Positions 3,484-50,302 of a stretch of 64,000 nt of DNA are shown here, in pieces. A program made the position numbers and the translations under genes. The notes under the pieces are model-generated. The model was not told where the DNA came from. It searched no databases and was given only the letters and a program-made list of their open reading frames with translations. Numbering within the stretch: position 1 is the first letter of the stretch; the number at the start of each line of letters is the position of its first letter. The stretch covers positions 1 through 64,000 of the IMG/VR virus record IMGVR_UViG_3300023184_000025. One strand, 5' to 3'.

Positions 3484-4428
3484 TTACTTAGATGCTTTTG
3501 TTTTCTTTTTAGCTAGAGCAGGCGTTTCTATTGCCTTGACTGATTTAGCCACTGCTTTAACTGGCTTGGCTTCTGTCTTGCCTTGTTTGGCTGTTTCTGT
3601 AACAGGTGATTCATTACTGGCAATAACTCGAGAAGTTGCAGACACCTCTTGTTGAGCTAACTGTGCATCTGCTAGTTTCTTAGCTTCAACATTTGCCTTG
3701 GCAATAACACTAAGGTCTTCGTACAATTTGTCCTGTGTGTTAAAATCAAACACATAGGTGCCGGTGTGCTTGAGCAATACCCGCTTGTCAATCCAGACTT
3801 TACCACCAATATCGCGCCAGTTTTCGCAGAATGTCCAGTCTTCTGAATAGTAGCGACCTTCGCGTACTGCTGTGTCGTAATATGTCTTCATGTATGGATC
3901 TAATTCTACTGGTAATCCAATGTCGTTTTTAAAGGGTTTGACTGCTTGATGTACATTGAGTTTATCAAATACATTGCGTTTTACCAACATAAAACCTGTG
4001 CCTGTTTTGCTAACTTCTTGAAGGTTGCCGTCTTCGCTGACTTCTGCATTTTCAAAACCATTAACTACCCACTTGATTGGCAAAGTTTTCATTGGATATA
4101 ATCCGCCAACAACATCTTTTTGTGAATCAAGAAGTACTAGTAAATGCCAAGGTTCCCAACCAATGTCTGCATCAATGAACATCAGGTGTGTTGAGTCTGG
4201 GTTGTTTAAGAATTTAGCAACCAGTGTATTTCTAGCACGGCTAATTAATGATTCATTGGTCATGGTTTCCATGGTCCACTCAATGCCAAGTTGTCGGCAA
4301 GTGTTGGCCCATTTGATATAACTCATGAATGTGCTTTCAGTTAACATGCCACCGTAGCAGGGCATACAGATATGCACTCTAGTGGTGCGCAGGTAGTCAA
4401 CGTTGACTTGGATTTGTTGTTCAGCCAT
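3484..4428 (-). CDS. GT-A fold glycosyltransferase-like protein with Lys/Ala-rich C-terminal tail
   Basis: SLISRARN, LMFIDADIGW (DxD), GTGFMLVKR and SEDWTFC motifs. Confidence 0.75.
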   Translation of the reverse strand: MAEQQIQVNVDYLRTTRVHICMPCYGGMLTESTFMSYIKWANTCRQLGIEWTMETMTNESLISRARNTLVAKFLNNPDSTHLMFIDADIGWEPWHLLVLLDSQKDVVGGLYPMKTLPIKWVVNGFENAEVSEDGNLQEVSKTGTGFMLVKRNVFDKLNVHQAVKPFKNDIGLPVELDPYMKTYYDTAVREGRYYSEDWTFCENWRDIGGKVWIDKRVLLKHTGTYVFDFNTQDKLYEDLSVIAKANVEAKKLADAQLAQQEVSATSRVIASNESPVTETAKQGKTEAKPVKAVAKSVKAIETPALAKKKTKASK

Positions 4429-4629: not shown

Positions 4630-5622
4630 TTACTTGTTTGTTTCATCAATATAGTCATTGTTTTCGCCAATGTCAATTTCTCGACCACGTGCAATTGGAC
4701 GTCTGCCTTGCTTGTCTGAGAAATCCTCCAACCTTGCCAACGCTTGAACTTTACTTTGCATGGCACCGGCTTTGTACATTAAATGTTCAACTCCTCGATA
4801 GTTACCAACTTTGAGCATTTCTGCTAACTCAACTAATTGTTTTACTAAACTGTTTTTAAGACTGCCTTCGTTCCAGGTTCCAAGTCCACCAGTGGGACGA
4901 ATTTGAACTCCGTCATCAGGATCATTGACCAGGGTAGCTTCGTCAACTTCTTTATCAGGACCGTTTGGCATTGGCATTCCTGCATTCAATCCTCCGGCTC
5001 CTACACCAAAGGCTGGGCCTTGTAGTGCTTCTTTTACATCATTGCCCATGCCTGCATCAATTAGTTTAGTTGTTACATTGGTTAACTTTTCGTTACCTTG
5101 GGTCTGTGGATACAGTGAATTAACCAATGAGGCTTTTTGTTCTGACGACATTGCAGGCCATTTAGCACGAATTTCTGTGGCACTGGTCATGCCTGAGCCA
5201 AACTGTACCACAGGCAAATATGCTATGTAAGCATGCTGAGTCATTGGCTGTAGACCTGTGCGCTTGTATGGTTGTAAGTAGCCAGCACTACCATCCTTTT
5301 TTACATCGCCTGGCACGGGCTGTTCGTTACGATCCTTTTCACTGCGTACAAAAATTAATTGTGTGCTACCAGGATCATAATGCTGTGTAATTTCATTGGC
5401 ACGGAAAGGACTTTTAACCTGAATAAATCTGTGTGCAGGAATGCCGGCTAATTTTGCTAGTTTTTGTTTGACTGCAAAAGGAAAAGGTCTTGTTGAAGTA
5501 TCTGCTGTGGCGGCAATATAAACGTCGGCACTAGGGAAAGCCGCTTGGGCCGAATCGTATAGAGCTTTATGGCCTGCGTGAAAGGGGTGGAAACCACCGG
5601 GCATAATGACTAGTTTTTTCAT
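4630..5622 (-). CDS. HxGH (cytidylyl/adenylyltransferase-like, NadD/CoaD superfamily) protein with C-terminal extension
   Basis: PGGFHPFHAGH and TSATEIR motifs; the C-terminal part is set off by VKE|A and VDE|A. Confidence 0.7.
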   Translation of the reverse strand: MKKLVIMPGGFHPFHAGHKALYDSAQAAFPSADVYIAATADTSTRPFPFAVKQKLAKLAGIPAHRFIQVKSPFRANEITQHYDPGSTQLIFVRSEKDRNEQPVPGDVKKDGSAGYLQPYKRTGLQPMTQHAYIAYLPVVQFGSGMTSATEIRAKWPAMSSEQKASLVNSLYPQTQGNEKLTNVTTKLIDAGMGNDVKEALQGPAFGVGAGGLNAGMPMPNGPDKEVDEATLVNDPDDGVQIRPTGGLGTWNEGSLKNSLVKQLVELAEMLKVGNYRGVEHLMYKAGAMQSKVQALARLEDFSDKQGRRPIARGREIDIGENNDYIDETNK

Positions 5623-24225: not shown

Positions 24226-25212
24226 ATGATTAAAATAGACCAAATCCGTGCATTACACATTGAACTTAGTTCTCGTTGCAATGCACGATGTCCCATGTGT
24301 ATGCGTAACTACCGGGGCGTGGATTTTAATGGAGGGTATCCGTTGACTGAGTTGTCACTCAGTGATATTCAACACATATTCCCTTCACACTTTTTAAAAC
24401 AAATTAACCGTATTAACTTTAACGGAAATCTTGGAGATTTTAGTCTGGCCAGCGATGCGTTGGAAATAGTTGACTACTTTTTATCTAATAGTACTGCTCA
24501 AATACAGATTGAAACAAATGGTAGTACACGTTCTACTGCCTGGTGGCAGAAATTAAACAACCATCGAATTAAAGTATTATTTGCATTAGACGGACTCAAA
24601 GACACACACAATCTGTACCGTCAGAACACTGATTGGGAAAAAATAATAGATAATGCTGTGGCGTTAATCCAATCAGGCGGAAATGCTGTTTGGAAATTTA
24701 TTCCGTTTAAACATAACCAACATCAATTTAATAGTTGTCAGACACTGAGCCGTCAGTTGGGATTTTCAGATTTTACAGTACGAGATCAGGGACGTAATCA
24801 AGGACCGGTATTTACAAGAAACGGCGAGTTTAGTCATTGGCTTGGCGATGCACAATCTGACATACCCGATTCTAATGCTTTAATTGAAGATCATTTGACC
24901 TGGTTTGATTATAAAAAGAAAATTCCCTGGGTTAATGATAATGCACAAATAGATTGTGGCCATATAAAACAAAAAGAGATTTATATAGCTGCCGACGGAT
25001 CTGTGTATCCTTGTTGTTATCTGGGATATTTTCCAAAGACAATGCATCAACCAGGAAACAGTCAATTTAAAGATCTTGTCAAAGAAAACAATGCATTAGA
25101 ATACAGTCTAGAGCATTGCATTGATTGGTTTGACCAGGTAGAAAAAACCTGGACTTTACCCAGTGTGGCACAGGGTAAGTTGTATACGTGTGTTAGTGCC
25201 TGCGGACACTAA
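24226..25212 (+). CDS. Radical SAM protein with SPASM/twitch-like C-terminus
   Basis: CNARCPMC, ETNG, FALDG and ADGSVYPCC...C..ACG motifs. Confidence 0.88.
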   Translation: MIKIDQIRALHIELSSRCNARCPMCMRNYRGVDFNGGYPLTELSLSDIQHIFPSHFLKQINRINFNGNLGDFSLASDALEIVDYFLSNSTAQIQIETNGSTRSTAWWQKLNNHRIKVLFALDGLKDTHNLYRQNTDWEKIIDNAVALIQSGGNAVWKFIPFKHNQHQFNSCQTLSRQLGFSDFTVRDQGRNQGPVFTRNGEFSHWLGDAQSDIPDSNALIEDHLTWFDYKKKIPWVNDNAQIDCGHIKQKEIYIAADGSVYPCCYLGYFPKTMHQPGNSQFKDLVKENNALEYSLEHCIDWFDQVEKTWTLPSVAQGKLYTCVSACGH

Positions 25213-25219
25213 CACTTTT

Positions 25220-25843
25220 CTATTCACCAATGATAATATTGTAGAGTTCTTTCCAATTTTTTACTATTGGAATTGATTCATGGTAATGGTTCATGTTATG
25301 CCCGTGTTCAATGAGAATTGATTTGAGTCCAATATCAAACCCAACTTTGGCATTTTCGGGTTTGTCTTCTACCCACCAGCACCCTGAGTTTCTATAAGGC
25401 TCAAGTGCTTCGTGTTTGTCAGCACCTGTAGGCAAACAAACAATCTCTTCAAATACTGTATCGCCAAACAATTTGTCAAGATTCATTCTGCGTAATTTTT
25501 GTGCGTTGGGATCTGTACTAAGGCTAGTAATACAATGAAACACATAGCCATGTTCTTCATGAAGACGTTTTACATAGTACATGGCATCACGCAGGGGTGG
25601 CAAGAATCCAATTGCGGCGCTTTCATTGAACATCTTGATCAGTTTGCGACCTTGTTCGTAAGAGATATTGTAACGTTCCCCAATATCGTAGTTTAACTCG
25701 CCGCCGGGTACCTTTGTAAATCCATGTTCGTCCATCCAGATAGCAAAGGCGTACTCCCAATTAAGCAGTACTCCGTCACAGTCAACTAGGATTACCTGAC
25801 TGTTCACCTGGCTGAGAGATCGGTTCTTGTTTAGTAATTTCAT
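25220..25843 (-). CDS. HAD-superfamily phosphatase (5'-nucleotidase-like)
   Basis: LVDCDGVL, ITS, K and WVEDK motifs. Confidence 0.82.
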   Translation of the reverse strand: MKLLNKNRSLSQVNSQVILVDCDGVLLNWEYAFAIWMDEHGFTKVPGGELNYDIGERYNISYEQGRKLIKMFNESAAIGFLPPLRDAMYYVKRLHEEHGYVFHCITSLSTDPNAQKLRRMNLDKLFGDTVFEEIVCLPTGADKHEALEPYRNSGCWWVEDKPENAKVGFDIGLKSILIEHGHNMNHYHESIPIVKNWKELYNIIIGE

Positions 25844-26843
25844 ATCCGTTTTCTTTAAATAATCGTGTAATGGTCAATATAATATTAAGTCAATGTAAAC
25901 GAGCAGTGATTGTATTGTATAGATAATCAGCCCAAATCTCATGACCAAGTTCAGTTGGATGTTTTGTGGCTTTTTGGTAATTTAACTTGCTTTTTTCTAA
26001 CCATGAGATTGCCAATTCACTGCTGGCATATAGACTCATAAATTGGAATTTATATTTTTTATACAGGTCAATATCTTTGAGTAGCTTGTGCAATGGTACC
26101 AGCGCAATGCCAGAAAGAAATCTAACATCTGTAGGATAATCTTGATTACTCTGATACTCAGCCAAACAATCGACCCAGATTTTTTTAGTTAGATAATCTT
26201 CAAGCACTGAAATATTACTATCAAAACTGTAGGTAAAGTTTCTAGAAATTACAAATTGAACCAAACTATGTTGCTTGCATGTTTGAGCAAGATTCTCAAA
26301 CATATTTTTTTCGTATTCACACAAATATTCTTCAAGACTGGGTTGTTCTTCAGGAACCCAAACTCTGTCCCAATATGATTCTCGGCAGTTTTCAGTTAGA
26401 GTAATTGTCACAATAATCTTTTTATATTTTGTCTCAACTATAGGTAAAAGACTTTTTACCCAATCACAAAACTCTATATTGGCACCACCACACTTGGCAA
26501 GATTGATAAAATCAGCATCTAGTTTTTTTGCCAGCAATGCACCATATATTTTGTTGACTCTGTTGGGATGGTCATGCTTACCAGCTTCAGCATCAATATC
26601 AAGAAGACTATCTCCCCAGGTCCAGCTGTCCCCAGCTGTGATCAACAAAGTATCTTTGTTGTGTAGTGATTCATGATACCACGATCTTGCTGGAGATGAA
26701 AGATTGTTGTGTATTTCAGCTAATAAATTAAAATAACCCATTGATCTAAGTTGTTAGGGCAACAGCGTTGCCGATTGTTTGTTCATTGGCTTTTCTTCTT
26801 TTTTAATTTCGTACCCGTTTTCTTTAAGTAATCGTGTAATGGT
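25835..26843. repeat. 40-bp imperfect direct repeat (25835-25874 / 26804-26843) bracketing an SGNH gene
   Basis: taatttcatatccgttttctttaaataatcgtgtaatggt vs taatttcgtacccgttttctttaagtaatcgtgtaatggt (37/40 identical). Confidence 0.85.
25890..26741 (-). CDS. SGNH-hydrolase-like protein
   Basis: AGDSWTWG, NLAKCGGAN and HPTELGH motifs. Confidence 0.68.
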   Translation of the reverse strand: MGYFNLLAEIHNNLSSPARSWYHESLHNKDTLLITAGDSWTWGDSLLDIDAEAGKHDHPNRVNKIYGALLAKKLDADFINLAKCGGANIEFCDWVKSLLPIVETKYKKIIVTITLTENCRESYWDRVWVPEEQPSLEEYLCEYEKNMFENLAQTCKQHSLVQFVISRNFTYSFDSNISVLEDYLTKKIWVDCLAEYQSNQDYPTDVRFLSGIALVPLHKLLKDIDLYKKYKFQFMSLYASSELAISWLEKSKLNYQKATKHPTELGHEIWADYLYNTITARLH

Positions 26844-27059
26844 TGACTCGTAGTACTGATAAAAATAAGTGATAATTTTGTCCCAGTCCTTGGGTAAATT
26901 TTGACCTTCCAGGGTGCATTTTACCACCTCAAGTTTTTTAAAGTCTAAGATAACACTACAGGTCTGGATGTCTTTGGTTTTGACATTTTTAGATACAGTC
27001 ATGACTTCGTCAATTTTGCCATCAGCTTTTCTAAAGTATGTAATAAGCATGTATCTCAT
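26754..27059 (-). CDS. Hypothetical protein
   Basis: 101 aa, coupled to the clamp loader gene. Confidence 0.6.
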   Translation of the reverse strand: MRYMLITYFRKADGKIDEVMTVSKNVKTKDIQTCSVILDFKKLEVVKCTLEGQNLPKDWDKIITYFYQYYESTITRLLKENGYEIKKEEKPMNKQSATLLP

Positions 27060-27976
27060 AGCTGACTTAACTCTACTAGTGTCGCTGACAAATTAATTTC
27101 TTGGTCTGCCATCATTGGAATGTTTACAATTCCTTGTCTAATGATAACAATGGCCTGATCTTGCTTTGCAGGATTATCACTCCATAAATCAAGATTATCA
27201 TACATCCAACGATACACTTCTTCCATTTCTTCTGGACGCACACTTGAACATAGCAAAATACGTGCTTCTTTAACTCGACCAGCTTTGAATAAATTGACTA
27301 CATCCAATTTCCAGTCTTTGATTGCACCGCCTTCGTCGCCCCTAGGAGAAGTAAGTTGTCCACTAGTGGAATTCATCTGACACATGTTAAGACATTTACG
27401 CAGATCAGGATACGTTGCTTTTACATAAGTATCCAAGGTATCCAAGTCAAACTCCATGCCTTCTGTGACCAACACAGTGGCAACACGAGCAGTAAACTCA
27501 GTGACGTCCACACGTTCAATGTGAAAACCCTGGCACCTAGAATGTAGCGCAGGAATAATACGGTTAGGGTAGTTACAAGTAAGAATGAAACGAGCACTGG
27601 CATGATATGTTTCCATGACACCGCGCAATGCAGCCTGCCCATTTGGAGTGATATAGTCTGCTTCGTCTAACAGTACAACTTTAAATTCACCAAACGGCAT
27701 TGTTTGCACAAAGCCAGTGATCTTATCTCTGATTGTTTCTACAGAGTTTTCTCTCGATGCGTTAATTTCTAACACATCATATTCGTCAATGCCCAATTGA
27801 TGTATCAGGATTTTGGCCAAGGTAGTTTTGCCCACACCCGGAGCTCCACTAAACAACAAGTGAGGTATTGAAGCCGACTTGACCCATCCTGCTACCTGTT
27901 CCTTTTGTGCATTGTCTCTAAATACATAACCATCCAAATCTATAGGGCGGTATTTTTCTGTCCAAAGTTCTTTCAT
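27056..27976 (-). CDS. Clamp loader ATPase subunit (RFC small subunit / T4 gp44-like)
   Basis: WTEKYRP, PHLLFSGAPGVGKTT, EINAS, LDEAD, AALR and SRC motifs. Confidence 0.92.
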   Translation of the reverse strand: MKELWTEKYRPIDLDGYVFRDNAQKEQVAGWVKSASIPHLLFSGAPGVGKTTLAKILIHQLGIDEYDVLEINASRENSVETIRDKITGFVQTMPFGEFKVVLLDEADYITPNGQAALRGVMETYHASARFILTCNYPNRIIPALHSRCQGFHIERVDVTEFTARVATVLVTEGMEFDLDTLDTYVKATYPDLRKCLNMCQMNSTSGQLTSPRGDEGGAIKDWKLDVVNLFKAGRVKEARILLCSSVRPEEMEEVYRWMYDNLDLWSDNPAKQDQAIVIIRQGIVNIPMMADQEINLSATLVELSQL

Positions 27977-36403: not shown

Positions 36404-37035
36404 TATGCCACTCCAGTGCCGTTAATGAACCAAGTATTGGTGGCAACTTTTATCAGAGTGGCCATGCCAAATGTGGATACGGTTCTGTTGCCAGCAGTGG
36501 CATTGCCAGCTAGATATAGTGTAACGCCGGACCCTTGTGCCACTGTGATATTACCGGTACCTTGATTGATAACAGTCACTGCCGATCCAGTCTGAAATGC
36601 TTGACTGGCATTGTTGGCAATGGTCAGTATGTAGTTGATGCTCTGTGTAGAATAGAAATGCTTGCCAGCGTCAGCAGTAGCTACAGTGGCATTGCCTGTG
36701 AATGCCACCTGCGGTATGTCTCGATAACCCAGAGAAAAGCCGCTGACATTGCCAGTCACGTTGCCACCAGTAACCAAGTTGTCACCTGTGACATTTCCTG
36801 ACGCTAAAATTTCACCAGTGACTGCTAACCCATCTTCTATGTTCACATAAGATGAATCATCACTAACAATATTGTTAATTACAAGATTAACTGCTGATAA
36901 ATTTCCACCAGTGATATTGCCTGTGGCTGTCAGCGTGTTTGTTTTGATATCGTCAAGTGCTACATCACCAATAGAGCCCTCTAATGGATTGCGTATTGTT
37001 CTTGCTATGCCATCTGTGCCTTTTAAAAATCCCAT
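36403..37035 (-). CDS. Tail-fibre-related protein
   Basis: GNITGGN repeats, GYRDIPQ, and C-terminal G.ATLIKVATNTW.I.G. Confidence 0.7.
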   Translation of the reverse strand: MGFLKGTDGIARTIRNPLEGSIGDVALDDIKTNTLTATGNITGGNLSAVNLVINNIVSDDSSYVNIEDGLAVTGEILASGNVTGDNLVTGGNVTGNVSGFSLGYRDIPQVAFTGNATVATADAGKHFYSTQSINYILTIANNASQAFQTGSAVTVINQGTGNITVAQGSGVTLYLAGNATAGNRTVSTFGMATLIKVATNTWFINGTGVA

Positions 37036-37106
37036 AACTGTTCCTTTGTTTTTTGTGTTATTTTGATATAATCATTAGATCAATCTTTCAATCATTGATC
37101 GATACA

Positions 37107-40100
37107 TTAACTGATTGCGATCCAACCGTAACGCACAGTTTGAGCACTACCGCTGGTGTTATTGATACCAAAGTCAAATCTATTGGTTGTTGCACTTGGC
37201 GCGGTATTACTGCGAACTATGGCATTTGCTGTACCTACAAACTGATTGGGTATGCTGGTAAAGTCAATGGGTGTGCCGCCGCCGTTGTAGACCCAGGCAT
37301 ACTGATAACCCACAACAGGCACATTGGTATTAGTAACAGTAGCCGTGGCGTTCCAAACCAAGATACCATTGGGAATATTGCAATCAACCCACATTTGATA
37401 GGTCTCGTTGATACCCACAGTGAAACTTTGAGTGCTGTTGCCTGTAGGCACAGTCCAAGTGCTTGAAAACCTTGTGACCGCATCCACTGGTGTGTTGTTG
37501 GCATAGTTTACGGCAAATGTGTTGCCGGGCAAAGTCAAGTTGCCGGTGTTGTTAAATGTCCAATTGTATGAACCGGCTACTAGGGTCACATTGGCGCTGG
37601 TTCCTTGAACATTGCCTGTGATACTAATATTACCAATCAAGTTGCCGGCTGTGATGTTGCCTGTAGTACTAATAGTATTGCTACCATATGCAGCCAAGAA
37701 TGTGGCCACATTGGCATTGCCGTAACTTGCGGCTATACCAGTTAGTTGTGATCCGTTACCAATAAAAAAGTTACCAGAAACATTGGCGGTTGTTGTAATA
37801 TTACCAGTTGAGCTGATTGGATTTGAGCCAAGTGCAGCCAAGTTGGCTACCACATTAGCATTGCCATATGTGGCTGGTAATCCAGTAAGTTGACTGCCGT
37901 TACCAATAAAGTAGTTGCCAGTGACGTTGCCTGTGGCCGAGATCAAACCATTTGTTAATATGTTACCACCAGTGATGTTGCCAGAGGAGGGCTCAACAGT
38001 GGCATAGTTTACATACTTTATGACGCCATCATAGGTCATTATACTCATGGCACCGTTGGAGGTGATATCTTGTGTGACTACAGGAGCCGGCAAGTTAGTC
38101 AATTCACTGCCGTTGCCTTTAATGTAAGCACCGGTGACATTGCCTGTAGCACTGATGTTGCCAGGCGCTGCCAAGTTACCACTAGCACCAAACACCCAAG
38201 TGTTGCCACCGGTTTCAATATTGACATGGCCTTCGTTGGCTTGACCATTGCCTGAAGCACCGCCCCAGATATTGACATTGCCACCGGTTGCGGTACCATA
38301 CCCACCGTATATTTTTACATCGCCACCTATGGTGTTACCTTGACCGCCGGTTACATTAACATATCCACCCACAGTATTACTGTAACCGCCGGTGATATCA
38401 ATATAACCTGGGTTGCCACCGGTAGTGGCTGCATCGCCTGCTTCCATACGAATGTATCCGCCTGAACCACCTGCACCACCTACTGTGTTTGCACCACCTT
38501 GACCACCACGAATTTTAATGTCTCCGCCTGAACCACTAGCATTGCCACCACGTCCGGCCCATAAGTAGATGTCACCACCTTCACCACCTTGATAACCTTC
38601 GCCTGGATTAATTACTAGTCGCTGACTACTATCACCATTAATACCGAGTACACCATCCGGTGTTGAAATGATTGCTTCTTGTGTGGCATTGCCAAACAAT
38701 AATGTTTGGCCGCTAATTGTGCCACTTGGATTGTCACCGCGCTGTGTAGTTAATGTTGGGAATATGGTTTCACCAGCCGCACCAAATGTCCAGTTGGACT
38801 CTACAAAGTTGTTGTTGCCTTGATTGCCCAGTACATTATATTGGGTCAGTCTAAATGTTGCCGCACCATTGCCAGCAGTCATGGTGATCACATCACCGTC
38901 CTGATAGTTTCCATCACCTGGATTGATAACTGAAGCATTGACCACCTGACCACTTAGGCCATAACCATACGCCACTGTGAGTCCTGTACCCGAACCGCCA
39001 GTGGTGGCTGAAAAACTGCCACCACCACCATAACCACTGCCACCGGTCAGTATGGTGCAGATGTTGAATTGTCCACCGGCTGTTAAGGTCAATCCTTCTA
39101 GGTTGACTACCCTGCCAGTGGTGTCAAATGTCCACTGCGCTGAGTTGCCCACATTATCATTGCTGTTGATCACAACATTGCCGGTGTTGGCCAGCTTGAC
39201 ATACAAGTTATCGTTGCCCAGGAACAGTTCAGTGTTGTACAAGTTACCCGAGGTCAAGTGCAAGTGATTGGCATCAGCGGTAGGATCAGCCGTTGGATAA
39301 ATCAACAACTGTTGATCAGTACTGGTTCCGCCCTGTGGTGTTAAGGCAATGGTATTGCCAGACAATACACCTCCAGGAATATTGGTTTCATAAACTATGC
39401 CACCCCGTGGTAGAGTTAAATTACCGTCGTATTCAAACGTCCAAGTATAAGGGGTTCCCGCATCAGATTGTATAGAAACCTTGCCATCAACATTGACAGC
39501 GACATTGGCACCTGTATCACGGCCAATGATGACATTTTCACCGTTGCCGGCAATATGAATGTCTGGGCCTGCACCACCCGTTAAGAAGATATCTAAATAA
39601 GCACTGGCATTAGCAGGATCTGGCTGTAAACGCAAGTTACCATCACCAATGATGTTGACGTCATCAAAGGTCACATTGCCGGTGTCGGCAGTTGAGATGC
39701 CAGTGAGTTGACTACCGTTGCCAAGGAAATAATCCGCAGTGACGTTGCCTCGAGTCTCTATGTCCCCGATCACATTGAGTCCGTCTTGGATGGTCACAAA
39801 CGAACTGTCATCACTGCTGATGTTATTGGTAATGATAGTGGATGCAGTAACGGTACCATCTGTGCTGATTACCAAAGGAATAGTACTTGCTGTTCTGTTC
39901 CGGACACTGAAGTCGTTGCTGCCATTGCCTAGGATACCAAAGTCCCATTGTTGGGTTGCATTTGCTTGGTCCTGAACTGACATGTAAGCACTACGGGGTG
40001 TGTTGTAGTTGTCATCATAGCCAACCACTGTTATACCCGGTCCGGCAACGATATCAAAATCTGTACTTTCCACTCTTGGTGTGTTGACTGTCACATAAGA

Positions 40101-43825: not shown

Positions 43826-44085
43826 TTTTTTATTCCTAATACAAATGCAGTGGCAATACCGCCTGACAAAAAACGAAAGCCTTGTTTGCAGGGCCAGTAG
43901 TGTCGCCCTGCTTGGTAACCATGTTGTGCTAGCCACCGGATCCAACGTTCTCGACGGGCGGACAGTTCGTTGCGAGCTTCAAGGAAGTCGCCTATTTTGT
44001 GCCGGCCTTCAAGTATGTCCATGAGATCCTGTACCCATGGACCAGTGTCCACAACAACATTACAGTGAGAATGTACAAGTTTCAT
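43822..44085 (-). CDS. Small hypothetical protein (probably leaderless mRNA)
   Basis: ATG lies 7 nt downstream of a consensus -10 box. Confidence 0.55.
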   Translation of the reverse strand: MKLVHSHCNVVVDTGPWVQDLMDILEGRHKIGDFLEARNELSARRERWIRWLAQHGYQAGRHYWPCKQGFRFLSGGIATAFVLGIKK

Positions 44086-44109
44086 GCTAGTATTATAGCA
44101 CGAGTAAAA

Positions 44110-44943
44110 TTACTGGTCAACTGGTATTTTACAAACCGGAATTGGTTCCATTTTGTGCAAATTTCGGGCACGTATAGCACGGTATGCTTTGAGCTTTTTC
44201 TTTTCTTGTGTATTATCAACACCTGAATTGGTTTCTGCCTGTGTCATAGCCAACTCTAATTCCGGATAAGTCATGCCCAATTGATCTTCATCTGTGCGGC
44301 CATCTGTCCATAATCCGTCTGTGGGTGCCGCATCAATAATTTCCTGAGGCAAACCAAATTCACGACCCATGTCCCACACCGCAGTTTTCATGCAGTCACC
44401 AATTGGGCTGATATCCACTCCACCATCGCCGTATTTGGTAAAGAATCCCACACCAAAGTCTTCTACACGATTACCTGTGCCCACTACAATACCACCATGG
44501 CTTTGTGCAATTTGGTACAAGGTCATCATGCGCAGTCTAGCACGTGAGTTGGCAAATGCAAGATTAACCCTTTGTTCATCTACATTTTCTCTACAGTAGG
44601 GTATGAGATTTTTTTCAAATGAATCAAAAACTTTGGTCAAGTCCATGCTCATGTGTGTGACTGTTTCCTTGTGGCGTTCCAGCAACCAATCTGCCTGCAT
44701 TGAGCTACAATTATCTAGTTTCTTGTTTTGCCTAATTGGCATTTGTACCACAATGGTTCGGAGTCCGGTGTTGGCACAAAGTGCGCTGACAACTGAGCTG
44801 TCAATGCCTCCTGAAATACCAACAACTAAAGTATCAACTTTGGCACTACGAGCGTAGTCTTTGATCCACTTGGTAATGTGTTTAATGCGTTGCTTGGGTG
44901 TCATTCGATCTCCGGTGGTGGCATGCTCTTGAGTGTATCCCAC
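44110..44943 (-). CDS. nadE: NH3-dependent NAD+ synthetase
   Basis: VGISGGIDS, N.RARLRM, VVGTGN, GFFTKYGDGGVD, PTDGLW and DEDQLG motifs. Confidence 0.92.
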   Translation of the reverse strand: MGYTQEHATTGDRMTPKQRIKHITKWIKDYARSAKVDTLVVGISGGIDSSVVSALCANTGLRTIVVQMPIRQNKKLDNCSSMQADWLLERHKETVTHMSMDLTKVFDSFEKNLIPYCRENVDEQRVNLAFANSRARLRMMTLYQIAQSHGGIVVGTGNRVEDFGVGFFTKYGDGGVDISPIGDCMKTAVWDMGREFGLPQEIIDAAPTDGLWTDGRTDEDQLGMTYPELELAMTQAETNSGVDNTQEKKKLKAYRAIRARNLHKMEPIPVCKIPVDQ

Positions 44944-45482
44944 ATTTTGGTTTTTTCTTTAAACTCAGCTTCAAGTTTTCTATACTGGTCGCCTACTTCA
45001 CGTAGTTGGTCCCATTCAGCTTCTAATTCAGGATTGGGTTGAAGTAAATTAAGACGGTCTTGAATTACTTTTAGTGTGTCACAGAGACTGACTCCGTTGA
45101 TTTTGATATCAGCGTTTTCACCCTTGACATCAATAACACCACTGCCTTGATTGGAGTTAATATTCACAGCAGATGGCTGTTGAGTGGTATTGATATTACT
45201 CCAGTTAAATCCTGGTCCAGAGCCGCTGGTTGTTATTGGCCCAATTGTATATACTGGACTTCCACCTGTTATTGTCATTGATCCGTATCCTGACCCCAGT
45301 GTGATTGTATCCACAGTAGCAGAGGACGCCATGGTATTTTGATCAAGCCACGAATTGTCAACTGTTGAATCTGTCAGATCTAAACTTAGTGTATCATGTA
45401 TAGAGGACATACTATTAAACAAATCTAATTGTTCTGTATAATCTTTTTTAATTCCCATGATCCATCCTTTAAGTCTGTCCAA
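44901..45482 (-). CDS. Hypothetical protein (start uncertain)
   Basis: Low-complexity N-terminal half and coiled-coil C-terminus. Confidence 0.55.
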   Translation of the reverse strand: MDRLKGWIMGIKKDYTEQLDLFNSMSSIHDTLSLDLTDSTVDNSWLDQNTMASSATVDTITLGSGYGSMTITGGSPVYTIGPITTSGSGPGFNWSNINTTQQPSAVNINSNQGSGVIDVKGENADIKINGVSLCDTLKVIQDRLNLLQPNPELEAEWDQLREVGDQYRKLEAEFKEKTKMWDTLKSMPPPEIE

Positions 45483-45598
45483 TTAAGTACATCACCTTCT
45501 TGCCAACCGGCAGCTTCTAACAATTCCTCAGGGAACTTAAGAATAGCATCACCGGTTTCTGGGTCTTCTTCAACTGTGAGAGTCCAGGACTGAGTCAT
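45425..45598 (-). CDS. AbrB/MazE-like small DNA-binding protein (57 aa)
   Basis: Hand-translated MTQSWTLTVEEDPETGDAILKFPEELLEAAGWQEGDVLNW... Confidence 0.65.
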   Translation of the reverse strand: MTQSWTLTVEEDPETGDAILKFPEELLEAAGWQEGDVLNWTDLKDGSWELKKIIQNN

Positions 45599-45599
45599 T

Positions 45600-45785
45600 T
45601 TATTTTGTTGCCAAAGCTTCTTTTTCTGCTGTGATTTCTTTACGGCGCTCTTTGATGCCTTTGCTCATTTCTTGCAAGGCCTTGCGAGCACGGGCGGCGG
45701 CTGCCTTAACACCCTTTTGGGTAAACTTCTCATTTTCTGCCAGGTAGCTTTCGTAAGCGGCTACGATTTGTTCATGTTGTGTCAT
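45600..45785 (-). CDS. Histone H1-like (Hc1-type) basic protein
   Basis: KF..KGVKAAAARARKALQE......RRKEI; strong Shine-Dalgarno (AAGGAG) and own promoter. Confidence 0.7.
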   Translation of the reverse strand: MTQHEQIVAAYESYLAENEKFTQKGVKAAAARARKALQEMSKGIKERRKEITAEKEALATK

Positions 45786-45855
45786 TGTAATCTCCTTAAG
45801 TTGACTTTAGTATTTTATGATTAAATGCCACCAATGTCAATAGTTTTTGGCACTC

Positions 45856-46092
45856 TTAGTCTATATGTCTTTTGTTCCAGCAATCCCAGATTGTGACATT
45901 GTCCCAATCATGAGACCAATTAAGATGGAATACAGATAATCCTCTTTGCTCAAATATTTTCATACGATTGTTTTCTATGGAGACCTGAACATTTGAATCT
46001 TTGGCCCATTGTTTGAGCAGTTGCTCTGCATTCTTATCTCGCAGAATAACTATGTACAGAGCTTCTTGAGCTCTGAAATTACTTATACTCAT
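45856..46092 (-). CDS. Hypothetical protein
   Basis: 78-aa ORF. Confidence 0.5.
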   Translation of the reverse strand: MSISNFRAQEALYIVILRDKNAEQLLKQWAKDSNVQVSIENNRMKIFEQRGLSVFHLNWSHDWDNVTIWDCWNKRHID

Positions 46093-46093
46093 T

Positions 46094-46348
46094 TTAATGT
46101 ATGGTTGTACCGATTGGTATTGTTATATCGTTCAACAGAGATTGATCAGTTTCGTGAATCAACTCTTCAAACGCATGGTTAAGTTCTATGTAGTCTTCAT
46201 CATATTTACTAGCAGACTTAGAATCCATTCCTAAAAGACGCATTATGTTTCCCATGCGTATTTTTTTATAACCATATGAGTGCATTACTTTGCATAAATC
46301 AAGAAGTAATAATTTTATTGTGTCCTCAGAGACTTTGTCATCTAGCAT
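46094..46348 (-). CDS. Hypothetical protein
   Basis: 84-aa ORF. Confidence 0.5.
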   Translation of the reverse strand: MLDDKVSEDTIKLLLLDLCKVMHSYGYKKIRMGNIMRLLGMDSKSASKYDEDYIELNHAFEELIHETDQSLLNDITIPIGTTIH

Positions 46349-46425
46349 ATTTTTAATTATGATTGAAACAAAGATATGGCGTTTTTGGCACTCTAATAAT
46401 TTATGGTTTAAGATTAAGAGGCCAT

Positions 46426-46450
46426 AAAAAAGCGGCCTCTAGGGCCGCTT
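46426..46450 (-). terminator. Rho-independent terminator
   Basis: AAGCGGCC-N5-GGCCGCTT followed by a T-run on the minus strand, downstream of 46470..46829. Confidence 0.8.
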
Positions 46451-46469
46451 GTTAATACAAGCATTGCGC

Positions 46470-46829
46470 TTATACTTGGGCTTCAGGAGCCTTTGCTTCT
46501 GTTTTTGCAACAGGAGCCTTGGTTGCCACAGTCTTTGCAGACTTTGCAGTTACCTTGATCTCGCCTTTCTTGGCAAGCTTGGTCTTCTCAGACAGCTTGT
46601 TAGCTACAGCATAGCTGGCATCACCAGTATAGCCTTGCGTGTCTTGCAAGAACTGCAGAGCTTGCAGTTTTGTCATGGGCAAGGGCAGTTCCATCAAATT
46701 GATGTTAGTGCATCCTGCCTTGTTGAGGATCTTGATGCGAGCGACCAAGTCGTTAGCAAAGCGAGCCTTTGTGGTACCGTCTGCGTTAGTTGCGGTACCT
46801 GCTACTGTAAAAAGTTTAGATTCTGACAT
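46470..46829 (-). CDS. Hypothetical basic protein, possibly DNA-binding
   Basis: K.RFAND..R.K.L.K.G...I.L.ELP..MTK with Lys/Ala-rich tail; own promoter and terminator. Confidence 0.7.
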   Translation of the reverse strand: MSESKLFTVAGTATNADGTTKARFANDLVARIKILNKAGCTNINLMELPLPMTKLQALQFLQDTQGYTGDASYAVANKLSEKTKLAKKGEIKVTAKSAKTVATKAPVAKTEAKAPEAQV

Positions 46830-46936
46830 TGTGTTGCCTTTCGGAGTTGCCTGTTAAGTTAAAGTTTGTATGCTGTTTTATCAGCATATCATTAGTATAG
46901 CAAAAAAGGGTTTTTGTGTCAACCTTTTCTGCTACA

Positions 46937-46986
46937 TTTGAGCAAGTAAATGTGTTGTTTTTTTGCAACACATTTACCCGCTCAAA
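46937..46986. repeat. Long inverted repeat containing a TGTTG-N8-CAACA box
   Basis: TTTGAGC-AA-GTAAATGTGTTG-N8-CAACACATTTAC-CC-GCTCAAA. Confidence 0.8.
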
Positions 46987-47047
46987 ACTGGTTAATTTTT
47001 TGTCCATGTATGTATTATAGCACGAATCAATTAATTGGTCAACCATT

Positions 47048-47467
47048 TTATTGGTAGTCTTTGTCCAATTTGACATTGGTTAAACCTGCAATGGTTTGGA
47101 AACGATCCCAGGCATCCTGGGCCGCAGGGTTACGGGTTAGTTCACTGCTGGGAAGTACTGCTTCTAACCAAATCTCTGGGCGACGGCTTGGATGCGCACC
47201 AAACTTGCGAGGTTGGTGTAACTTGCCTTGTTCCCAAAGTTCAATGCTAACACTACGAAATTTAGCTTCATCTTCGTCTGAATAGTGCGCCCATTCAGGA
47301 TTGCTCCACCCACTTCTCAAATGGTATCCTGACCAAATACCTGTCCATTGTTCATCATCATGAGGATCAAAATCCGTGCGACTGATGATAATCAAAACGT
47401 CGTTGATGTCTACTCGACCGTCTACAATATCTCGAACACAACGACTATAACTAAGTCCAATTTTCAT
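47048..47467 (-). CDS. Hypothetical phage protein
   Basis: IGLSYSRCVRDI and GKLHQPR motifs. Confidence 0.65.
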   Translation of the reverse strand: MKIGLSYSRCVRDIVDGRVDINDVLIIISRTDFDPHDDEQWTGIWSGYHLRSGWSNPEWAHYSDEDEAKFRSVSIELWEQGKLHQPRKFGAHPSRRPEIWLEAVLPSSELTRNPAAQDAWDRFQTIAGLTNVKLDKDYQ

Positions 47468-47473
47468 AATATG

Positions 47474-47896
47474 TTACCAACTAGAATTATAAAATACTTT
47501 GAGTCCCATGAACAACTCAGCTCGAGCGTTCCGTATAAATTCAAGATCAAGATCTTGATAGTGGTCATCTGCGTCGTTGCCAAAAAAGAATCCTGATGTA
47601 CCCGGTAATGTACCTGCAATGACATCAAGCTCAAGTCGTTCTAAATCATCATAAGTTAACTCAAGTTCAATACCATTAAAGGTGTTGCCATCCTGATTGC
47701 CACCGTTGCGTTGATTCCATAACTGTTCCATCCAACCATGCAGGTTAGGGTGCTTGCGCCAGTAGGCAAGTTCACGTGGTTTAGATACCACCTTGTTGAC
47801 AAAATCCCTAGAATCTTGGTCAAATTCGGCACCCTCGTAAAACTCACTTTGTTGGCCAGCCCTTGCGGCCACGTATGCGTACATATCAAGTCCCAT
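47474..47896 (-). CDS. Hypothetical phage protein (MGLD...YWRK family)
   Basis: MGLDMY, YWRKH..LHGW, GFFFG and Y.SSW motifs. Confidence 0.7.
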   Translation of the reverse strand: MGLDMYAYVAARAGQQSEFYEGAEFDQDSRDFVNKVVSKPRELAYWRKHPNLHGWMEQLWNQRNGGNQDGNTFNGIELELTYDDLERLELDVIAGTLPGTSGFFFGNDADDHYQDLDLEFIRNARAELFMGLKVFYNSSW

Positions 47897-47907
47897 GCTG
47901 GTGCTCC

Positions 47908-48249
47908 TTATCTAATTGCAATTGCATTTTCGTCACGTCGATTGCTGTAATAACGATGACCGATTCTGCGAATGGTATCTGCGGCCATCTGCGGATCAGC
48001 ATCAAACATATCCTGAACGTCATCTTTGGTAATGCCTTCTTGAGCATTAAAAATATAAATTTCGTAGTGTCGTTGACTATTATAACGTGCTCTGAGTTCA
48101 AGGTGCATTAGATTGGGAATCCTTACAGTATCGGGTTCACCTTTTAGTGCGGCCCAAACTTTAGCGCCTTGTGTTTCCGTAATGTCAATCAAAGTTTCAA
48201 GACCATAACAGTCCCACATGGCTAGAAATTGATGATCTTTGGGATTCAT
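47908..48249 (-). CDS. Hypothetical phage protein
   Basis: WDCYGLE and LRARYNSQRHYEIY motifs. Confidence 0.65.
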   Translation of the reverse strand: MNPKDHQFLAMWDCYGLETLIDITETQGAKVWAALKGEPDTVRIPNLMHLELRARYNSQRHYEIYIFNAQEGITKDDVQDMFDADPQMAADTIRRIGHRYYSNRRDENAIAIR

Positions 48250-48494
48250 AGATGAAACTTTTTCAAATAGTTTTTGGCCAAGGTCAAATCTTCTTTGTTA
48301 ATGGTATTGATGGTTTCATCAACTAGTTCTAGTAGAATTAGGCGCATGAGTGTTTCGCTCATTTCTCGTTCTTCAAGATCCAAAGTTGCCTGCCAAGCTT
48401 CTATGTCCTCATAGTGTTCAAGGCTCCACATTATGTCCAGCATTTCAACCTGACGACCAGTGAGATTACTAATATTAATATCTTTATCAAACAT
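48246..48494 (-). CDS. Hypothetical protein
   Basis: 82 aa, coupled to neighbouring genes. Confidence 0.6.
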   Translation of the reverse strand: MFDKDINISNLTGRQVEMLDIMWSLEHYEDIEAWQATLDLEEREMSETLMRLILLELVDETINTINKEDLTLAKNYLKKFHL

Positions 48495-49225
48495 TATAAC
48501 ACCTTGACACGATTGAGTTGGGTTTTGTTGTCACGGTGAGCTTTTACAGTACCAACCAATTTGATTTGGATGCCCGAATTCAGCTGAGATTTGTAGCTGA
48601 AAAACAAGGCTCGATTATCTTGAGTAATTGCAGTAACCCAAAAAATGTTGTATGTGTTGCTCCAATTGGCACTTACAACTTCTGCGTCCAATGCTACTTT
48701 GTCGCTGACATTGCCAACATAGCCGCCGCTGGCATTGCGTACACGATCCTGGATTGATTGGCGCACCAATGCACGTTGGTGGCTCTGTGGCAAACATGCA
48801 ACCACAGCCAGTTCCAGGCGATGTTGTACTGAGTCAAATTCTTCTTCAACAGCTACAACTTTACTGACGCTTGCATCAAATGCACTTAGCTGACCTTTGA
48901 GCGCACGGAAGGTAAGGTCATTTTGCAAGAACCTACGGCACTCCTGCCCAATCACACGATCCTCGTCGGTGATGGAGCCGGGTACAGCCAGGAAGTCCAT
49001 CATAATGTCACGATTGCGCTTCTTGATAGTTTCATGAGTACCATCTTCAGTGATATTAATTTTATCTTCTTTGAGATATTCTCCGTTGACACGTTGTGCC
49101 GCTACAGCCGCACCCCAAACATCATCAACAGAATACTTAAATGAATTCACTGTGGCTTTGGTGCGACGAACACCATAACGAGGATTGTAACCATTTGCTG
49201 GGGTAAAATAAGTCTTGGGATTCAC
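48494..49225 (-). CDS. Hypothetical protein with C-terminal OB-fold-like domain
   Basis: C-terminal VG.V..K...GTVKAH...TQLNRVK pattern. Confidence 0.55.
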   Translation of the reverse strand: MNPKTYFTPANGYNPRYGVRRTKATVNSFKYSVDDVWGAAVAAQRVNGEYLKEDKINITEDGTHETIKKRNRDIMMDFLAVPGSITDEDRVIGQECRRFLQNDLTFRALKGQLSAFDASVSKVVAVEEEFDSVQHRLELAVVACLPQSHQRALVRQSIQDRVRNASGGYVGNVSDKVALDAEVVSANWSNTYNIFWVTAITQDNRALFFSYKSQLNSGIQIKLVGTVKAHRDNKTQLNRVKVL

Positions 49226-49237
49226 GGTGTCTCCTGT

Positions 49238-49645
49238 TTACTTAACTAATACGTAGGGCTTGCTCCACTCACCAATATTCAAGTGAATGTAAAAAGCGGT
49301 GTCAAAATAATCTGTCATTGCATCACTGCGGTCGTACCACTGACGCTCGGGTGAAGTTTTAATGATACGCAAGAACTGATCGATTGCGTCCTTGGCTTCG
49401 CCAGTAAAATGATCTTGGAACCAGTAGGGGTTAATCTGCATGTAACCTTCTGCAAGACGACTGTCAACATGACGGTGATCTATGGTCTGATTGTGATTTT
49501 CAAAGAAATCAATAGGACCAGATTTAACAGTGACTTCAACGCTGAGCGAACCACTGCCTTTACGGGCACTGAATTTAAACTTGGGGAATTGTGCTTTGAG
49601 TGCTTCGCGAATTGACTTGACTTCTTGTGCTCCGATGTATGCCAT
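49238..49645 (-). CDS. Hypothetical early protein (LPD29-like)
   Basis: IR.ALK..FP..KFS.R and DRSDAMTDYFD motifs. Confidence 0.6.
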   Translation of the reverse strand: MAYIGAQEVKSIREALKAQFPKFKFSARKGSGSLSVEVTVKSGPIDFFENHNQTIDHRHVDSRLAEGYMQINPYWFQDHFTGEAKDAIDQFLRIIKTSPERQWYDRSDAMTDYFDTAFYIHLNIGEWSKPYVLVK

Positions 49646-49712
49646 TTTCTGCTCCTGTTTTGTTAGTGTATGTGTATATTATAGCAAATTGGGAATTATT
49701 GGTCAACCAAAA

Positions 49713-49964: not shown

Positions 49965-49976
49965 TTTGCTTTCCTT

Positions 49977-50240: not shown

Positions 50241-50302
50241 ACCAGCTCCTTTTTGTTTACTATACAAGTATTATAGCAAAATGGGCAATTCTGGTCAACC
50301 AG

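What the first reader, a model, noticed from the sequence alone, without database searches (positions are those of the whole stretch)
25835..26843. Footprint of a gene-cassette insertion that duplicated a gene's 3' end
The SGNH gene is bracketed by a 37/40-nt direct repeat. The upstream copy encodes TITRLLKENGYEI in ORF 26754..27059. The downstream copy reads TITRLFKENGYEITKQEPISQPGEQSGNPS*, an orphaned alternative C-terminus that also overlaps the HAD gene's ATG. The ~1 kb cassette appears to have entered by recombination within the gene end, and could be excised by recombination between the repeats.
Basis: seen in the sequence. Interest (0 to 1): 0.6.

Follow-up and report, generated by a model that had tools for sequence, protein, structure and literature searches.

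The report
Esterase gene cassette insertion scar in phage
A roughly 1-kb esterase gene was spliced between two overlapping genes of a large freshwater phage, duplicating 51 bases of one gene's end, and copies in related phages show how phages swap single genes using only general recombination.

Summary
They bracket an intact GDSL/SGNH-fold esterase gene.

The reading as an insertion footprint is supported. Close relatives lacking the esterase gene carry one copy. There gene X runs into exactly the 'orphan' tail and overlaps the HAD-like gene by about 60 nt.

New findings:
- X's present tail came in with the cassette. The left join is a homologous crossover inside the repeat. The right join is non-homologous, 15 nt past the esterase stop.
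- The duplication restores the HAD gene's start codon and first 20 codons, which lie inside X's 3' end.
- The cassette moves between phages: 91% nt identity where backbone genes are 64-70% identical. I found five junction types.
- In one phage it sits at an unrelated locus, circularly permuted and bounded by an 8-bp repeat. That implies a circular or tandem intermediate.
- The window's junction is exact in all 13 fetched loci that span it (7 window-type, 6 of a second lineage).

No excised variant was seen, and the read test could not be run. The closest known system is PeSL mini-circle shuffling in T4-type phages. I rate this a new variant of a known kind, of moderate interest.

The parts
27056..27976 (-). 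Clamp-loader (RFC/gp44-like AAA+) gene, a backbone marker. Its stop overlaps the start of X (ATGA).
   Evidence: Pfam AAA and DNA_pol3_delta2. PHROG 168 clamp loader, E 8e-74. Nearest isolates are the PA5oct-like Pseudomonas jumbo phages, 54% aa.
26754..27059 (-). Gene X, 101 aa, function unknown, conserved next to the clamp loader. It has a folded core (about residues 1-80) and a variable disordered tail.
   Evidence: ORF list. 17-sequence family alignment A9. AlphaFold core pLDDT about 90, residues 87-96 below 50. No Pfam, PHROG, PDB or fold match.
26793..26843 (-). Repeat copy R1 (upstream in gene sense), encoding TITRLLKENGYEIKKEE of X. It is a hybrid: the left part is resident-type and the right part is cassette-type.
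   Evidence: R1 matches L002 up to AAAACGG, then follows the L048/L025-type sequence.
26815..26827 (-). Left crossover interval, 13 nt (TTAAAGAAAACGG in gene sense). It is bounded by the C/T site at 26828 and the G/A site at 26814.
   Evidence: Alignments A1 and A5. Coordinates converted from L024 by window = 30742 - L024 position.
26742..26814 (-). Imported part of X (codons for ...YEIKKEEKPMNKQSATLLP*) plus the 12-nt spacer before the esterase ATG. The tail is homologous to the tails of L025 and L048 but frameshifted by a 1-nt deletion.
   Evidence: Alignment A5. Tails listed. R1+tail is 77-81% identical to L025/L048, where X codons 1-72 are 64% identical to L025.
25890..26741 (-). Cargo gene: GDSL/SGNH-fold esterase, 283 aa. 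GDSWTWG and HP..GH are invariant across homologues.
   Evidence: dN/dS is 0.05-0.12 in all pairs of contexts and GC is 35.2% against 41.2% for the window.
25875..25889 (-). Cassette 3' flank (CTTAATATTATATTG in gene sense). The first 11 nt are shared by every cassette copy. The non-homologous right joint lies between 25875 and 25874.
   Evidence: Alignments A3 and A6 and the flank listing.
25824..25874 (-). Repeat copy R2 (downstream), resident-type. It re-supplies the HAD gene's upstream region, its ATG (25841-25843) and its first codons.
   Evidence: R2+tail is 95.7% identical to L002 and 96.8% to L135-type.
25782..25874 (-). Orphaned ancestral 3' end of X (TITRLFKENGYEITKQEPISQPGEQSGNPS*). 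For X it is now non-coding; it overlaps the HAD N-terminus in another frame.
   Evidence: The same tail is the live C-terminus of X in L002-L006.
25220..25843 (-). HAD-superfamily phosphatase-like gene (DCDG motif), resident-type.
   Evidence: Weak Pfam Hydrolase/NT5C hits. PHROG 420. 95% nt identical to L002 against 81-84% to L025/L048.

Best explanation
The window comes from a freshwater jumbo myovirus distantly related to PA5oct. In the ancestral layout, gene X (next to the clamp loader) overlaps the following HAD-like gene by about 60 nt. The HAD start codon sits inside X's conserved GYEI codons.

A 969-bp segment carrying a GDSL/SGNH esterase gene was acquired from another co-circulating phage that already had this gene downstream of its own X. 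The left join is a homologous crossover in the most conserved stretch of X's 3' end, so X now ends in the donor's tail. The right join is an illegitimate joint 15 nt past the esterase stop. It lands on codon 73 of the resident X, upstream of the left crossover point, so 51 nt of X are present twice.

The second copy is kept because it carries the HAD gene's initiation region, start codon and first 20 codons. X tolerates the swap because its tail is disordered and variable.

The cassette then spreads and is reshuffled by ordinary homologous recombination, including crossovers inside the esterase gene. Occasionally sequences flanking the gene recombine to give a circular or tandem form that can enter an unrelated site at a few bases of homology. 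No dedicated recombinase gene lies within the 969-bp cassette.

Shown: the repeat, the ancestral single-copy state, the imported tail, horizontal sharing, the mosaic junction types, and the permuted copy. Inferred: the order of events, the circular intermediate, and the reason the second copy is retained.
For: - Repeat: 45/51 against at most 33/51 in shuffles.
- Esterase-free relatives L002-L006 have a single copy with the orphan tail as X's live C-terminus. Outgroups L007 and L014-L018 share the X/HAD overlap.
- Hybrid pattern of the copies, and a tail homologous to those of L025/L048.
- Window versus L025 nt identity: RFC 69.8%, X codons 1-72 63.9%, esterase 91.1%. The window's HAD is 95% identical to L002.
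- L048 has the same backbone clade but took the cassette by two homologous crossovers, with a donor-type spacer and HAD N-terminus and no duplicate.
- L135-L140 are 100% identical to L048 up to mid-esterase, then 100% identical to the window through the right joint and into R2.
- L027: its nearest relatives L103/L110 have their two flanking genes abutting. The 954-bp insert is esterase + flank + X 3' end + donor tail + TAA + spacer, bounded by CAATGAGT on both sides. Its downstream part aligns to L048's upstream part with score 53 against at most 32 in 500 shuffles.
- X's tail is disordered and variable.
- The esterase is under purifying selection.
- The junction is exact in all 13 fetched loci that span it.
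Against: - No excised form, circle or tandem was observed directly.
- The direct donor of the window's tail was not found. The tail is only 77-81% identical to sampled ones and is frameshifted.
- The right joint has at most 1-2 nt of microhomology plus one unassigned G, so its mechanism cannot be read from the sequence.
- The T in copy 2, where copy 1 and L002 have C, could be donor-derived, ancestral or a mutation. It is shared with L135-type, so it cannot separate a single-crossover circle integration from a homologous-plus-illegitimate event.
- Whether the L025-type spacer is itself a decayed X relic is not significant.
Confidence: 0.85

Rival explanations
1. The esterase gene with its two flanking repeats is ancestral in this clade. 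The relatives lost it by recombination between the repeats, so the window shows the original state rather than an insertion.
For: Precise excision between R1 and R2 would recreate exactly the L002-type single copy, so any one esterase-free genome could be a revertant. A distant esterase homologue (33% aa) also sits directly after an X homologue in L051.
Against: Deeply diverged outgroups (L007, L014-L018; RFC about 62-66% aa) all have the X/HAD overlap with an NPS*-type tail and no esterase. The esterase is 91% nt identical between phages whose RFC and X are 64-70% identical, which fits recent transfer rather than vertical descent. Esterase-bearing genomes differ in their right junctions.
Confidence: 0.05
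2. The cassette entered the window lineage as a small circle by one homologous crossover within the repeat (Campbell-type). On this reading both copies are donor/resident hybrids and no illegitimate joint was made in this lineage.
For: Copy 1 is resident-left and donor-right. Copy 2 carries T (RLF, the family consensus and the L025 state) where the resident type has C, and is resident-type to the right. The permuted cassette in L027 argues that circular or tandem forms exist. PeSL mini-circles are documented in T4-type phages (PMC2839356).
Against: The hybrid reading of copy 2 rests on one nucleotide. The circle's repeat would have to begin with ACCATTACACGATTA, which is specific to the window's own clade and absent from the L025/L048/L027 flanks. 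The non-homologous joint TATATTG|ACCATT therefore had to be made once in this clade anyway.
Confidence: 0.2
3. A dedicated mobile-element mechanism placed the gene: a transposon with target-site duplication, an integron-like site-specific recombinase, or a homing endonuclease.
For: A direct repeat brackets a single gene, which superficially resembles a target-site duplication or att sites.
Against: The 969-bp segment holds only the esterase ORF. No transposase, integrase or endonuclease ORF lies within it or beside it. The copies differ in a left/right hybrid pattern rather than being identical. 51 nt is far longer than a usual target-site duplication (own knowledge). The junctions differ between genomes: homologous in L048, an 8-bp repeat in L027, 51 nt here. 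The repeat finder reported no inverted repeat at the cassette ends.
Confidence: 0.03
4. The repeat is an assembly or chimeric-contig artefact, or a chance similarity.
For: The contigs are metagenome assemblies, and repeats can mislead assemblers.
Against: The same junction is exact in the 7 window-type loci that span it, drawn from several ENA and Logan samples, and in 6 contigs of a second lineage. Shuffles never exceed 33/51. Both flanking genes and the cargo are intact and under selection.
Confidence: 0.01

Closest known systems
PeSL-flanked cassettes and PeSL mini-circles of T4-type phages (Arbiol et al. 2010, PMC2839356; Comeau et al. 2014, PMC4122927)
   Same: Single accessory genes are gained, lost or exchanged between related large myoviruses through recombination between short flanking repeats, with no integrase identified. 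A circular by-product carries one chimeric repeat and is proposed to re-insert elsewhere. The circularly permuted copy in L027 is what such a circle would leave behind.
   Different: Here the flanking repeat is not an intergenic promoter plus stem-loop module. It is a duplicated coding 3' end of the neighbouring gene, created by the insertion itself because the two resident genes overlap. No promoter- or terminator-like PeSL element flanks the gene in its sense strand. One joint is non-homologous. Circles were not demonstrated here.
Phage mosaicism by illegitimate recombination with selection for viable joints, and 'moron' insertions (own knowledge of the Hendrix/Hatfull model, not read here; the search listed related mycobacteriophage papers such as PMC3029335)
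   Same: One extra gene is inserted between two genes of a conserved block. One novel joint has essentially no homology. The recombinant survives because both neighbours stay intact.
   Different: Classical morons bring their own promoter and terminator and sit in intergenic DNA. This cargo sits inside a gene overlap, borrows translation signals, and the scar (duplicate plus orphan tail) is still readable. The ancestral, donor and recombinant states are all sampled.
Campbell-type integration of circular DNA, and integron cassettes (attC x attI)
   Same: The topology matches: an insert flanked by two hybrid repeats, a possible excised circle with one hybrid repeat, and a promoterless single-gene cargo.
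   Different: There is no site-specific recombinase and no conserved att or attC structure. The homology is a piece of a host-phage gene, and the junctions vary between genomes.

Membership tests
PeSL-mediated modular shuffling (T4-type phages) | The cassette is flanked on both sides by PeSL modules (early sigma-70-like promoter plus stem-loop terminator) in intergenic DNA | tested here: not met
   The flanking repeats are coding sequence of gene X. The consensus scan of 25000-27400 gave only two weak minus-strand hits near the cassette ends, a promoter-like site at 25942-25914 and another at 26947-26918, both inside coding sequence and neither paired with a stem-loop.
PeSL-mediated modular shuffling (T4-type phages) | Presence/absence polymorphism of the cassette between close relatives, with a single chimeric repeat at the empty site | tested here: met
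   L002-L006 have one copy at the empty site; the window and L135-L140 have two.
PeSL-mediated modular shuffling (T4-type phages) | Circular excision product detectable (inverse PCR or reads) | not testable with these tools
The only evidence is indirect: the circularly permuted insert in L027.
Transposon / insertion sequence with target-site duplication | A transposase gene and terminal inverted repeats, with a short identical target-site duplication | tested here: not met
   The only ORF in the insert is the esterase. The repeat finder reported no inverted repeat at the ends. The duplicate is 51 nt and 88% identical, in a hybrid pattern.
Integron-type gene cassette | An attC recombination site on the cassette and an integrase with attI nearby | tested here: not met
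   Among the genes scanned across 24226-27976 (rSAM, HAD, esterase, X, clamp loader), no integrase was found; PhoH was named only in the gene tables of the look-up of encoding contigs. The cassette's 3' flank is 11 conserved nt with no imperfect palindrome reported.
GDSL/SGNH hydrolase superfamily (the cargo protein) | SGNH-type alpha/beta/alpha fold with a block I GDS(x) serine and a block V histidine | tested here: met
   AlphaFold pLDDT 89.1. All top Foldseek PDB hits are GDSL/SGNH or carbohydrate esterases at probability 1.0, with modest TM of 0.35-0.43. G37-D38-S39 and H261 are invariant in 11 homologues. Pfam is sub-threshold only (DUF6071). Catalysis was not tested. The Asp usually found three residues before the block V His is not evident.

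The most novel reading that the evidence does not exclude
The piece of gene X that travels with the esterase gene works as a portable homology arm. Together with the gene's conserved start and 3' flank, it makes a roughly 0.95-kb recombinase-free mini-circle. That circle shuttles one functional gene among co-infecting jumbo phages, re-entering either at X (restoring or creating the duplicate) or at any start codon with a few matching bases. Phage gene overlaps would then be preferred docking points whose scars can be read as a record of gene flow.
Probability: 0.25. Interest if true: 0.7.

Novelty: new variant of a known kind. Interest (0 to 1): 0.5.

Why it matters
Gain of single accessory genes shapes phage genomes, but the joints are usually erased or the parental states are unknown. 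Natural sequences here preserve every stage:
- the ancestral overlap (L002-type);
- a donor-type layout (L025);
- a clean double-homologous replacement (L048);
- a homologous-plus-illegitimate product with a 51-nt duplicate (the window);
- a recombinant between the last two with its crossover inside the cargo gene (L135-type);
- a circularly permuted copy at an unrelated site (L027).

Together these show three things. Overlapping genes force a duplication when a gene is wedged between them. A disordered protein tail offers a tolerant landing zone. The cargo itself becomes the homology that spreads it. This extends the PeSL mini-circle idea beyond T4-like coliphages and beyond promoter-terminator repeats, to uncultivated freshwater jumbo phages. 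It also gives precise primers and sites for a direct test.

Tried and rejected
- blastn of the region against GenBank phages gave no match.
- A scan of viral contigs for the window's exact orphan-tail 29-mer, looking for an excised sibling, returned only the window's own contig.
- Exact look-ups of the window's HAD and X proteins found 13 and 12 contigs. All the places listed keep the esterase gene where the contig reaches it.
- Idea that the esterase C-terminus (YLYNTITARLH) derives from X (YYESTITRLLKEN): rejected. The nucleotide alignment is not significant (757, 166 and 845 of 1000 shuffles reach the score in the window, L025 and L048). The C-terminus is also conserved in distant homologues in unrelated contexts.
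- Idea that the L025/L048 spacer is a decayed second copy of their own repeat: not significant (983 and 986 of 1000 shuffles).
- A relic upstream of HAD in L008: borderline only (21 of 1000 shuffles).
- X relics beside more distant esterase homologues (64% identity and below): mostly none; the lowest count was 11 of 500 shuffles, for L040's downstream flank against L002's repeat, which I treat as not significant after 24 comparisons.
- Function of X: nothing in Pfam, PHROGs, a PDB profile search, Foldseek or VIA-align (best Z 3.8). Its position after the clamp-loader large subunit recalls T4 gp62, but that is recalled from memory and untested.
- A profile search of the esterase family against PDB sequences gave only chance hits.
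Full report
**What is at the coordinates.** All genes named here lie on the minus strand:
- a clamp-loader AAA+ gene at 27056-27976 (Pfam AAA/DNA_pol3_delta2, PHROG 168);
- a 101-codon gene I call X at 26754-27059, whose ATG overlaps the clamp-loader stop;
- a 283-codon ORF at 25890-26741;
- a 207-codon HAD-like ORF at 25220-25843.

The repeat finder reports one two-copy direct repeat here, 25824-25874 and 26793-26843, 45/51 identical and 969 bp apart. In 30 shuffles of the 4-kb region the best 51-nt direct match was 29-33. The window's own 262-kb virus record holds only these two copies. The upstream copy encodes TITRLLKENGYEI within X. The downstream copy, 15 nt after the stop of the 283-codon ORF, reads ...TITRLFKENGYEITKQEPISQPGEQSGNPS* and contains the HAD ATG.

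**The genome and the cargo.** The window matches a 345-kb IMG/VR contig. The nearest cultured relatives by clamp loader are the PA5oct-like Pseudomonas jumbo phages, at 54% aa. The cargo protein has only a sub-threshold Pfam hit (DUF6071). A model built from 11 homologues is confident (pLDDT 89). All top Foldseek PDB hits are GDSL/SGNH lipases, acetyl-xylan esterases, CE2 esterases or TesA, at probability 1.0. GDSWTWG and the HP..GH motif are invariant. The 'SGNH' label therefore stands at fold level. X has a well-predicted core (residues 1-80) and a disordered tail (pLDDT below 50 at 87-96). No informative family or fold match was found for it.

Searching viral contigs with X gave 22 further loci besides the window's own contig. 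In the closest ones, L002-L005 (identical to one another, about 91% nt to the window) and L006, the esterase gene is absent. X is followed directly by the HAD gene. X's C-terminus there is ...GYEITKQEPISQPAEQSSNPG*, the window's orphan tail, ending about 60 nt inside the HAD ORF. More distant relatives (L007, L014-L018; clamp loader 62-66% aa) have the same overlap, and their X tails end in NPS*, NSN* or similar.

**Anatomy of the two joins.** Aligning both window copies with the single copy of L002 gives a hybrid pattern (A1; A5).
- Copy 1 equals L002 up to ...TTAAAGAAAACGG. It then switches to GTACGAAATTAAAAAAGAAGAAAAGCC... and a tail unrelated to L002's.
- That tail is homologous to the X tails of two other esterase-bearing phages, L025 (KMEEKPVEQTTGNAVPTE*) and L048 (RKEEKPAEQTISNVVPTE*).
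- The window's version (KKEEKPMNKQSATLLP*) is the same sequence read after a 1-nt deletion, which fits a tail under little constraint.
- The left join is therefore a homologous crossover within a 13-nt interval (window 26815-26827), and X's present C-terminus was imported with the cargo.
- Downstream, every cassette copy shares the esterase stop plus CTTAATATTAT. After four more bases (ATTG) the window jumps to ACCATTACACG..., which is codon 73 of the resident X (A3, A6).
- There are at most 1-2 nt of microhomology and one unassigned G, so the right join is illegitimate.
- Because it lands 29 nt upstream of the left crossover interval, and the donor and resident sequences stay alike for a further 9 nt past that interval, the repeat reads as 51 nt.
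- Copy 2 plus its tail is 95.7% identical to L002, and the window's HAD is 95% identical to L002. Everything to the right of the joint is resident DNA.

**Why a duplicate (inference).** The HAD ATG lies inside X's GYEI codons, and X's stop lies 62 nt into the HAD ORF. Nothing can be placed between the two genes without either duplicating the overlap or giving one gene a new end.
- The window does both. X receives a new disordered tail, and the HAD gene keeps its own upstream region, start and first 20 codons on copy 2.
- Relatives L008-L013 solved the same problem differently. A radical-SAM/SPASM gene and an SDR-like gene sit at the same spot. The radical-SAM ORF begins MDMKLL..., which is the captured HAD start inside GYEI, and the HAD gene has a new start.

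**The cassette is mobile.** The esterase is 91.1% nt (93% aa) identical between the window and L025. Their clamp loaders are 69.8% identical, and X codons 1-72 are 63.9% identical. dN/dS of the esterase is 0.05-0.12 in every pair. Its GC content is 35.2% against 41.2% for the window. Besides the esterase-free ancestral layout (type A: L002-L006), five junction types were found:
- B: L025, L129 and L133, on a distant backbone, with X'-esterase-spacer-HAD'.
- C: L048, in the window's backbone clade (clamp loader 97% aa). Its spacer is type B and its HAD N-terminus is L025-like (HAD 88% to L025 against 83% to the window). It arose by two homologous crossovers and has no duplicate.
- E: the window.
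- D: L135-L140, six contigs from six sequencing runs. They are 100% identical to C from mid-clamp-loader to mid-esterase. They are then 100% identical to the window from mid-esterase through the right joint and into copy 2. Their HAD is 99.5% identical to L002. D is thus a C x E recombinant with its crossover inside the cargo gene.
- F: L027/L028, described next.

More distant esterase homologues (64% identity and below) sit in unrelated contexts without a clear X relic. One 33% homologue again follows an X homologue (L051).

**A circularly permuted copy.** In L027 the esterase (88% aa) lies between a glycosyltransferase-like gene and an aminotransferase-like gene. The 78.7-kb contig holds no X gene.
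- The nearest relatives, L103 and L110 (85% aa in the upstream gene), have those two genes abutting with a TTGA overlap.
- The L027 insert is 954 bp and is bounded by CAATGAGT on both sides, at 3999-4006 and 4953-4960.
- After the esterase and its conserved flank comes AAACTTAAAGAAAACAGCCACAAGATTAAAAATGAAGAAACCCCAGC...CCAACAAATAAGG-CAATGAGT.
- This aligns to the region upstream of the esterase in L048 (repeat, donor tail, TAA, spacer, esterase start) with score 53, against at most 32 in 500 shuffles. It reads KLKENSHKIKNEETPADQSTT..., close to L025's X tail.
- The unit that entered L027 was therefore esterase-flank-X 3' end-tail-spacer. That is a circular permutation of X 3' end-tail-spacer-esterase-flank.
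- The simplest origin is a circle, or equivalently a tandem duplication, made by recombination between the sequence downstream of the esterase and the repeat upstream of it. The product then recombined with the new site at the 8-bp match around the start codons.

**Stability.** Thirteen contigs carry the window's exact HAD protein and twelve its exact X protein. In all the places listed the esterase gene is present where the contig reaches it. The 60-nt right-junction string is exact in all 13 fetched loci that span it. No excised sibling was found by a 29-mer scan either. Assemblies report majority forms, so rare excision is not excluded.

**Comparison with known systems.** The closest described mechanism is PeSL-mediated shuffling in T4-type phages. 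There, recombination between short repeats flanking single ORFs deletes or inserts them and yields encapsidated mini-circles carrying one chimeric repeat (PMC2839356; PMC4122927).
- Shared features: repeat-flanked single-gene cargo, presence/absence polymorphism with a single repeat at the empty site, no integrase identified, and inferred circles.
- Differences: the repeat here is a duplicated coding end created by the event, not a promoter-terminator module. One joint is illegitimate. The phages are uncultivated jumbo viruses.
- The finding also fits the general model of phage mosaicism by rare illegitimate joints filtered by selection (own knowledge). Transposon, integron and homing explanations fail their defining features (see Membership tests).

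**Verdict.** This is a real and well-preserved insertion scar. I rate it a new variant of a known kind, with moderate interest (0.5). Its value lies in the unusually complete natural series of ancestral, donor and recombinant states, and in the permuted copy that points to a circular or tandem intermediate.

Noticed in passing
window 44083-53288: A family of at least 6 copies of a 39-62-nt motif (TATTATAGCA...TTGGTCAAC). Read on the other strand it is GTTGACCA-N17-TATAAT, a near-consensus sigma-70 promoter, sometimes with further conserved flanks (families D1, D3, D5, D7). These could be this phage's equivalent of repeated early-promoter (PeSL-like) modules in a region of small genes.
   Followed up: no
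L008-L013, locus coordinates 5242-7058 of L008: A different cargo sits at the same X/HAD joint: a radical-SAM/SPASM gene (385 aa) and an SDR-like gene (230 aa). The radical-SAM ORF starts MDMKLL inside X's GYEI codons, so it has taken over the ancestral HAD start. X is truncated to 88 aa and the HAD gene has a new start. The joint is a recurrent insertion hotspot.
   Followed up: partly
window 24226-25212 (+ strand); L006, L007, L014-L018: The radical-SAM/SPASM gene between the HAD gene and PhoH is present in the window and in L002-L005. It is absent in L006 and in more distant relatives, where HAD abuts PhoH. This is a second presence/absence polymorphism one gene away.
   Followed up: no
window 25782-25892 (- strand): The orphan tail is in the same reading frame as the esterase gene, directly after its TGA stop. 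Read-through of that stop would add LNIILTITRLFKENGYEITKQEPISQPGEQSGNPS. In L025 and L027 the same frame closes after 7-8 codons, so this is probably a one-in-three coincidence.
   Followed up: partly
window 26757-26792 (- strand): The window's X tail (PMNKQSATLLP*) is a frameshifted reading of the tail seen in L048/L135/L025 (P[AV]EQT..N.VPTE*), caused by a 1-nt deletion after CCA. All 12 contigs that carry this exact X protein share the frameshifted tail; R1 plus tail was checked letter for letter in L141 and L146-L149.
   Followed up: partly
L051 25-1141: On a 1.65-kb freshwater contig of a more distant clade, an X homologue (92 aa) is followed, with a 20-nt overlap, by a 285-aa esterase homologue (33% aa to the window's) and then a convergent PhoH gene. 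Either the X-esterase association is old, or this site attracts this gene family repeatedly.
   Followed up: no
window 36892-39750: Several families of 35-51-nt imperfect direct repeats (D2, D4, D10) lie within about 3 kb. They look like internal repeats of a large repetitive, possibly fibre-like, gene.
   Followed up: no
L150 3340-3480: Directly downstream of a 64%-identical esterase homologue in an unrelated phage-like contig, the DNA reads like tRNA genes (GGTTCGAGCCC T-arm motif). ARAGORN was not run.
   Followed up: no
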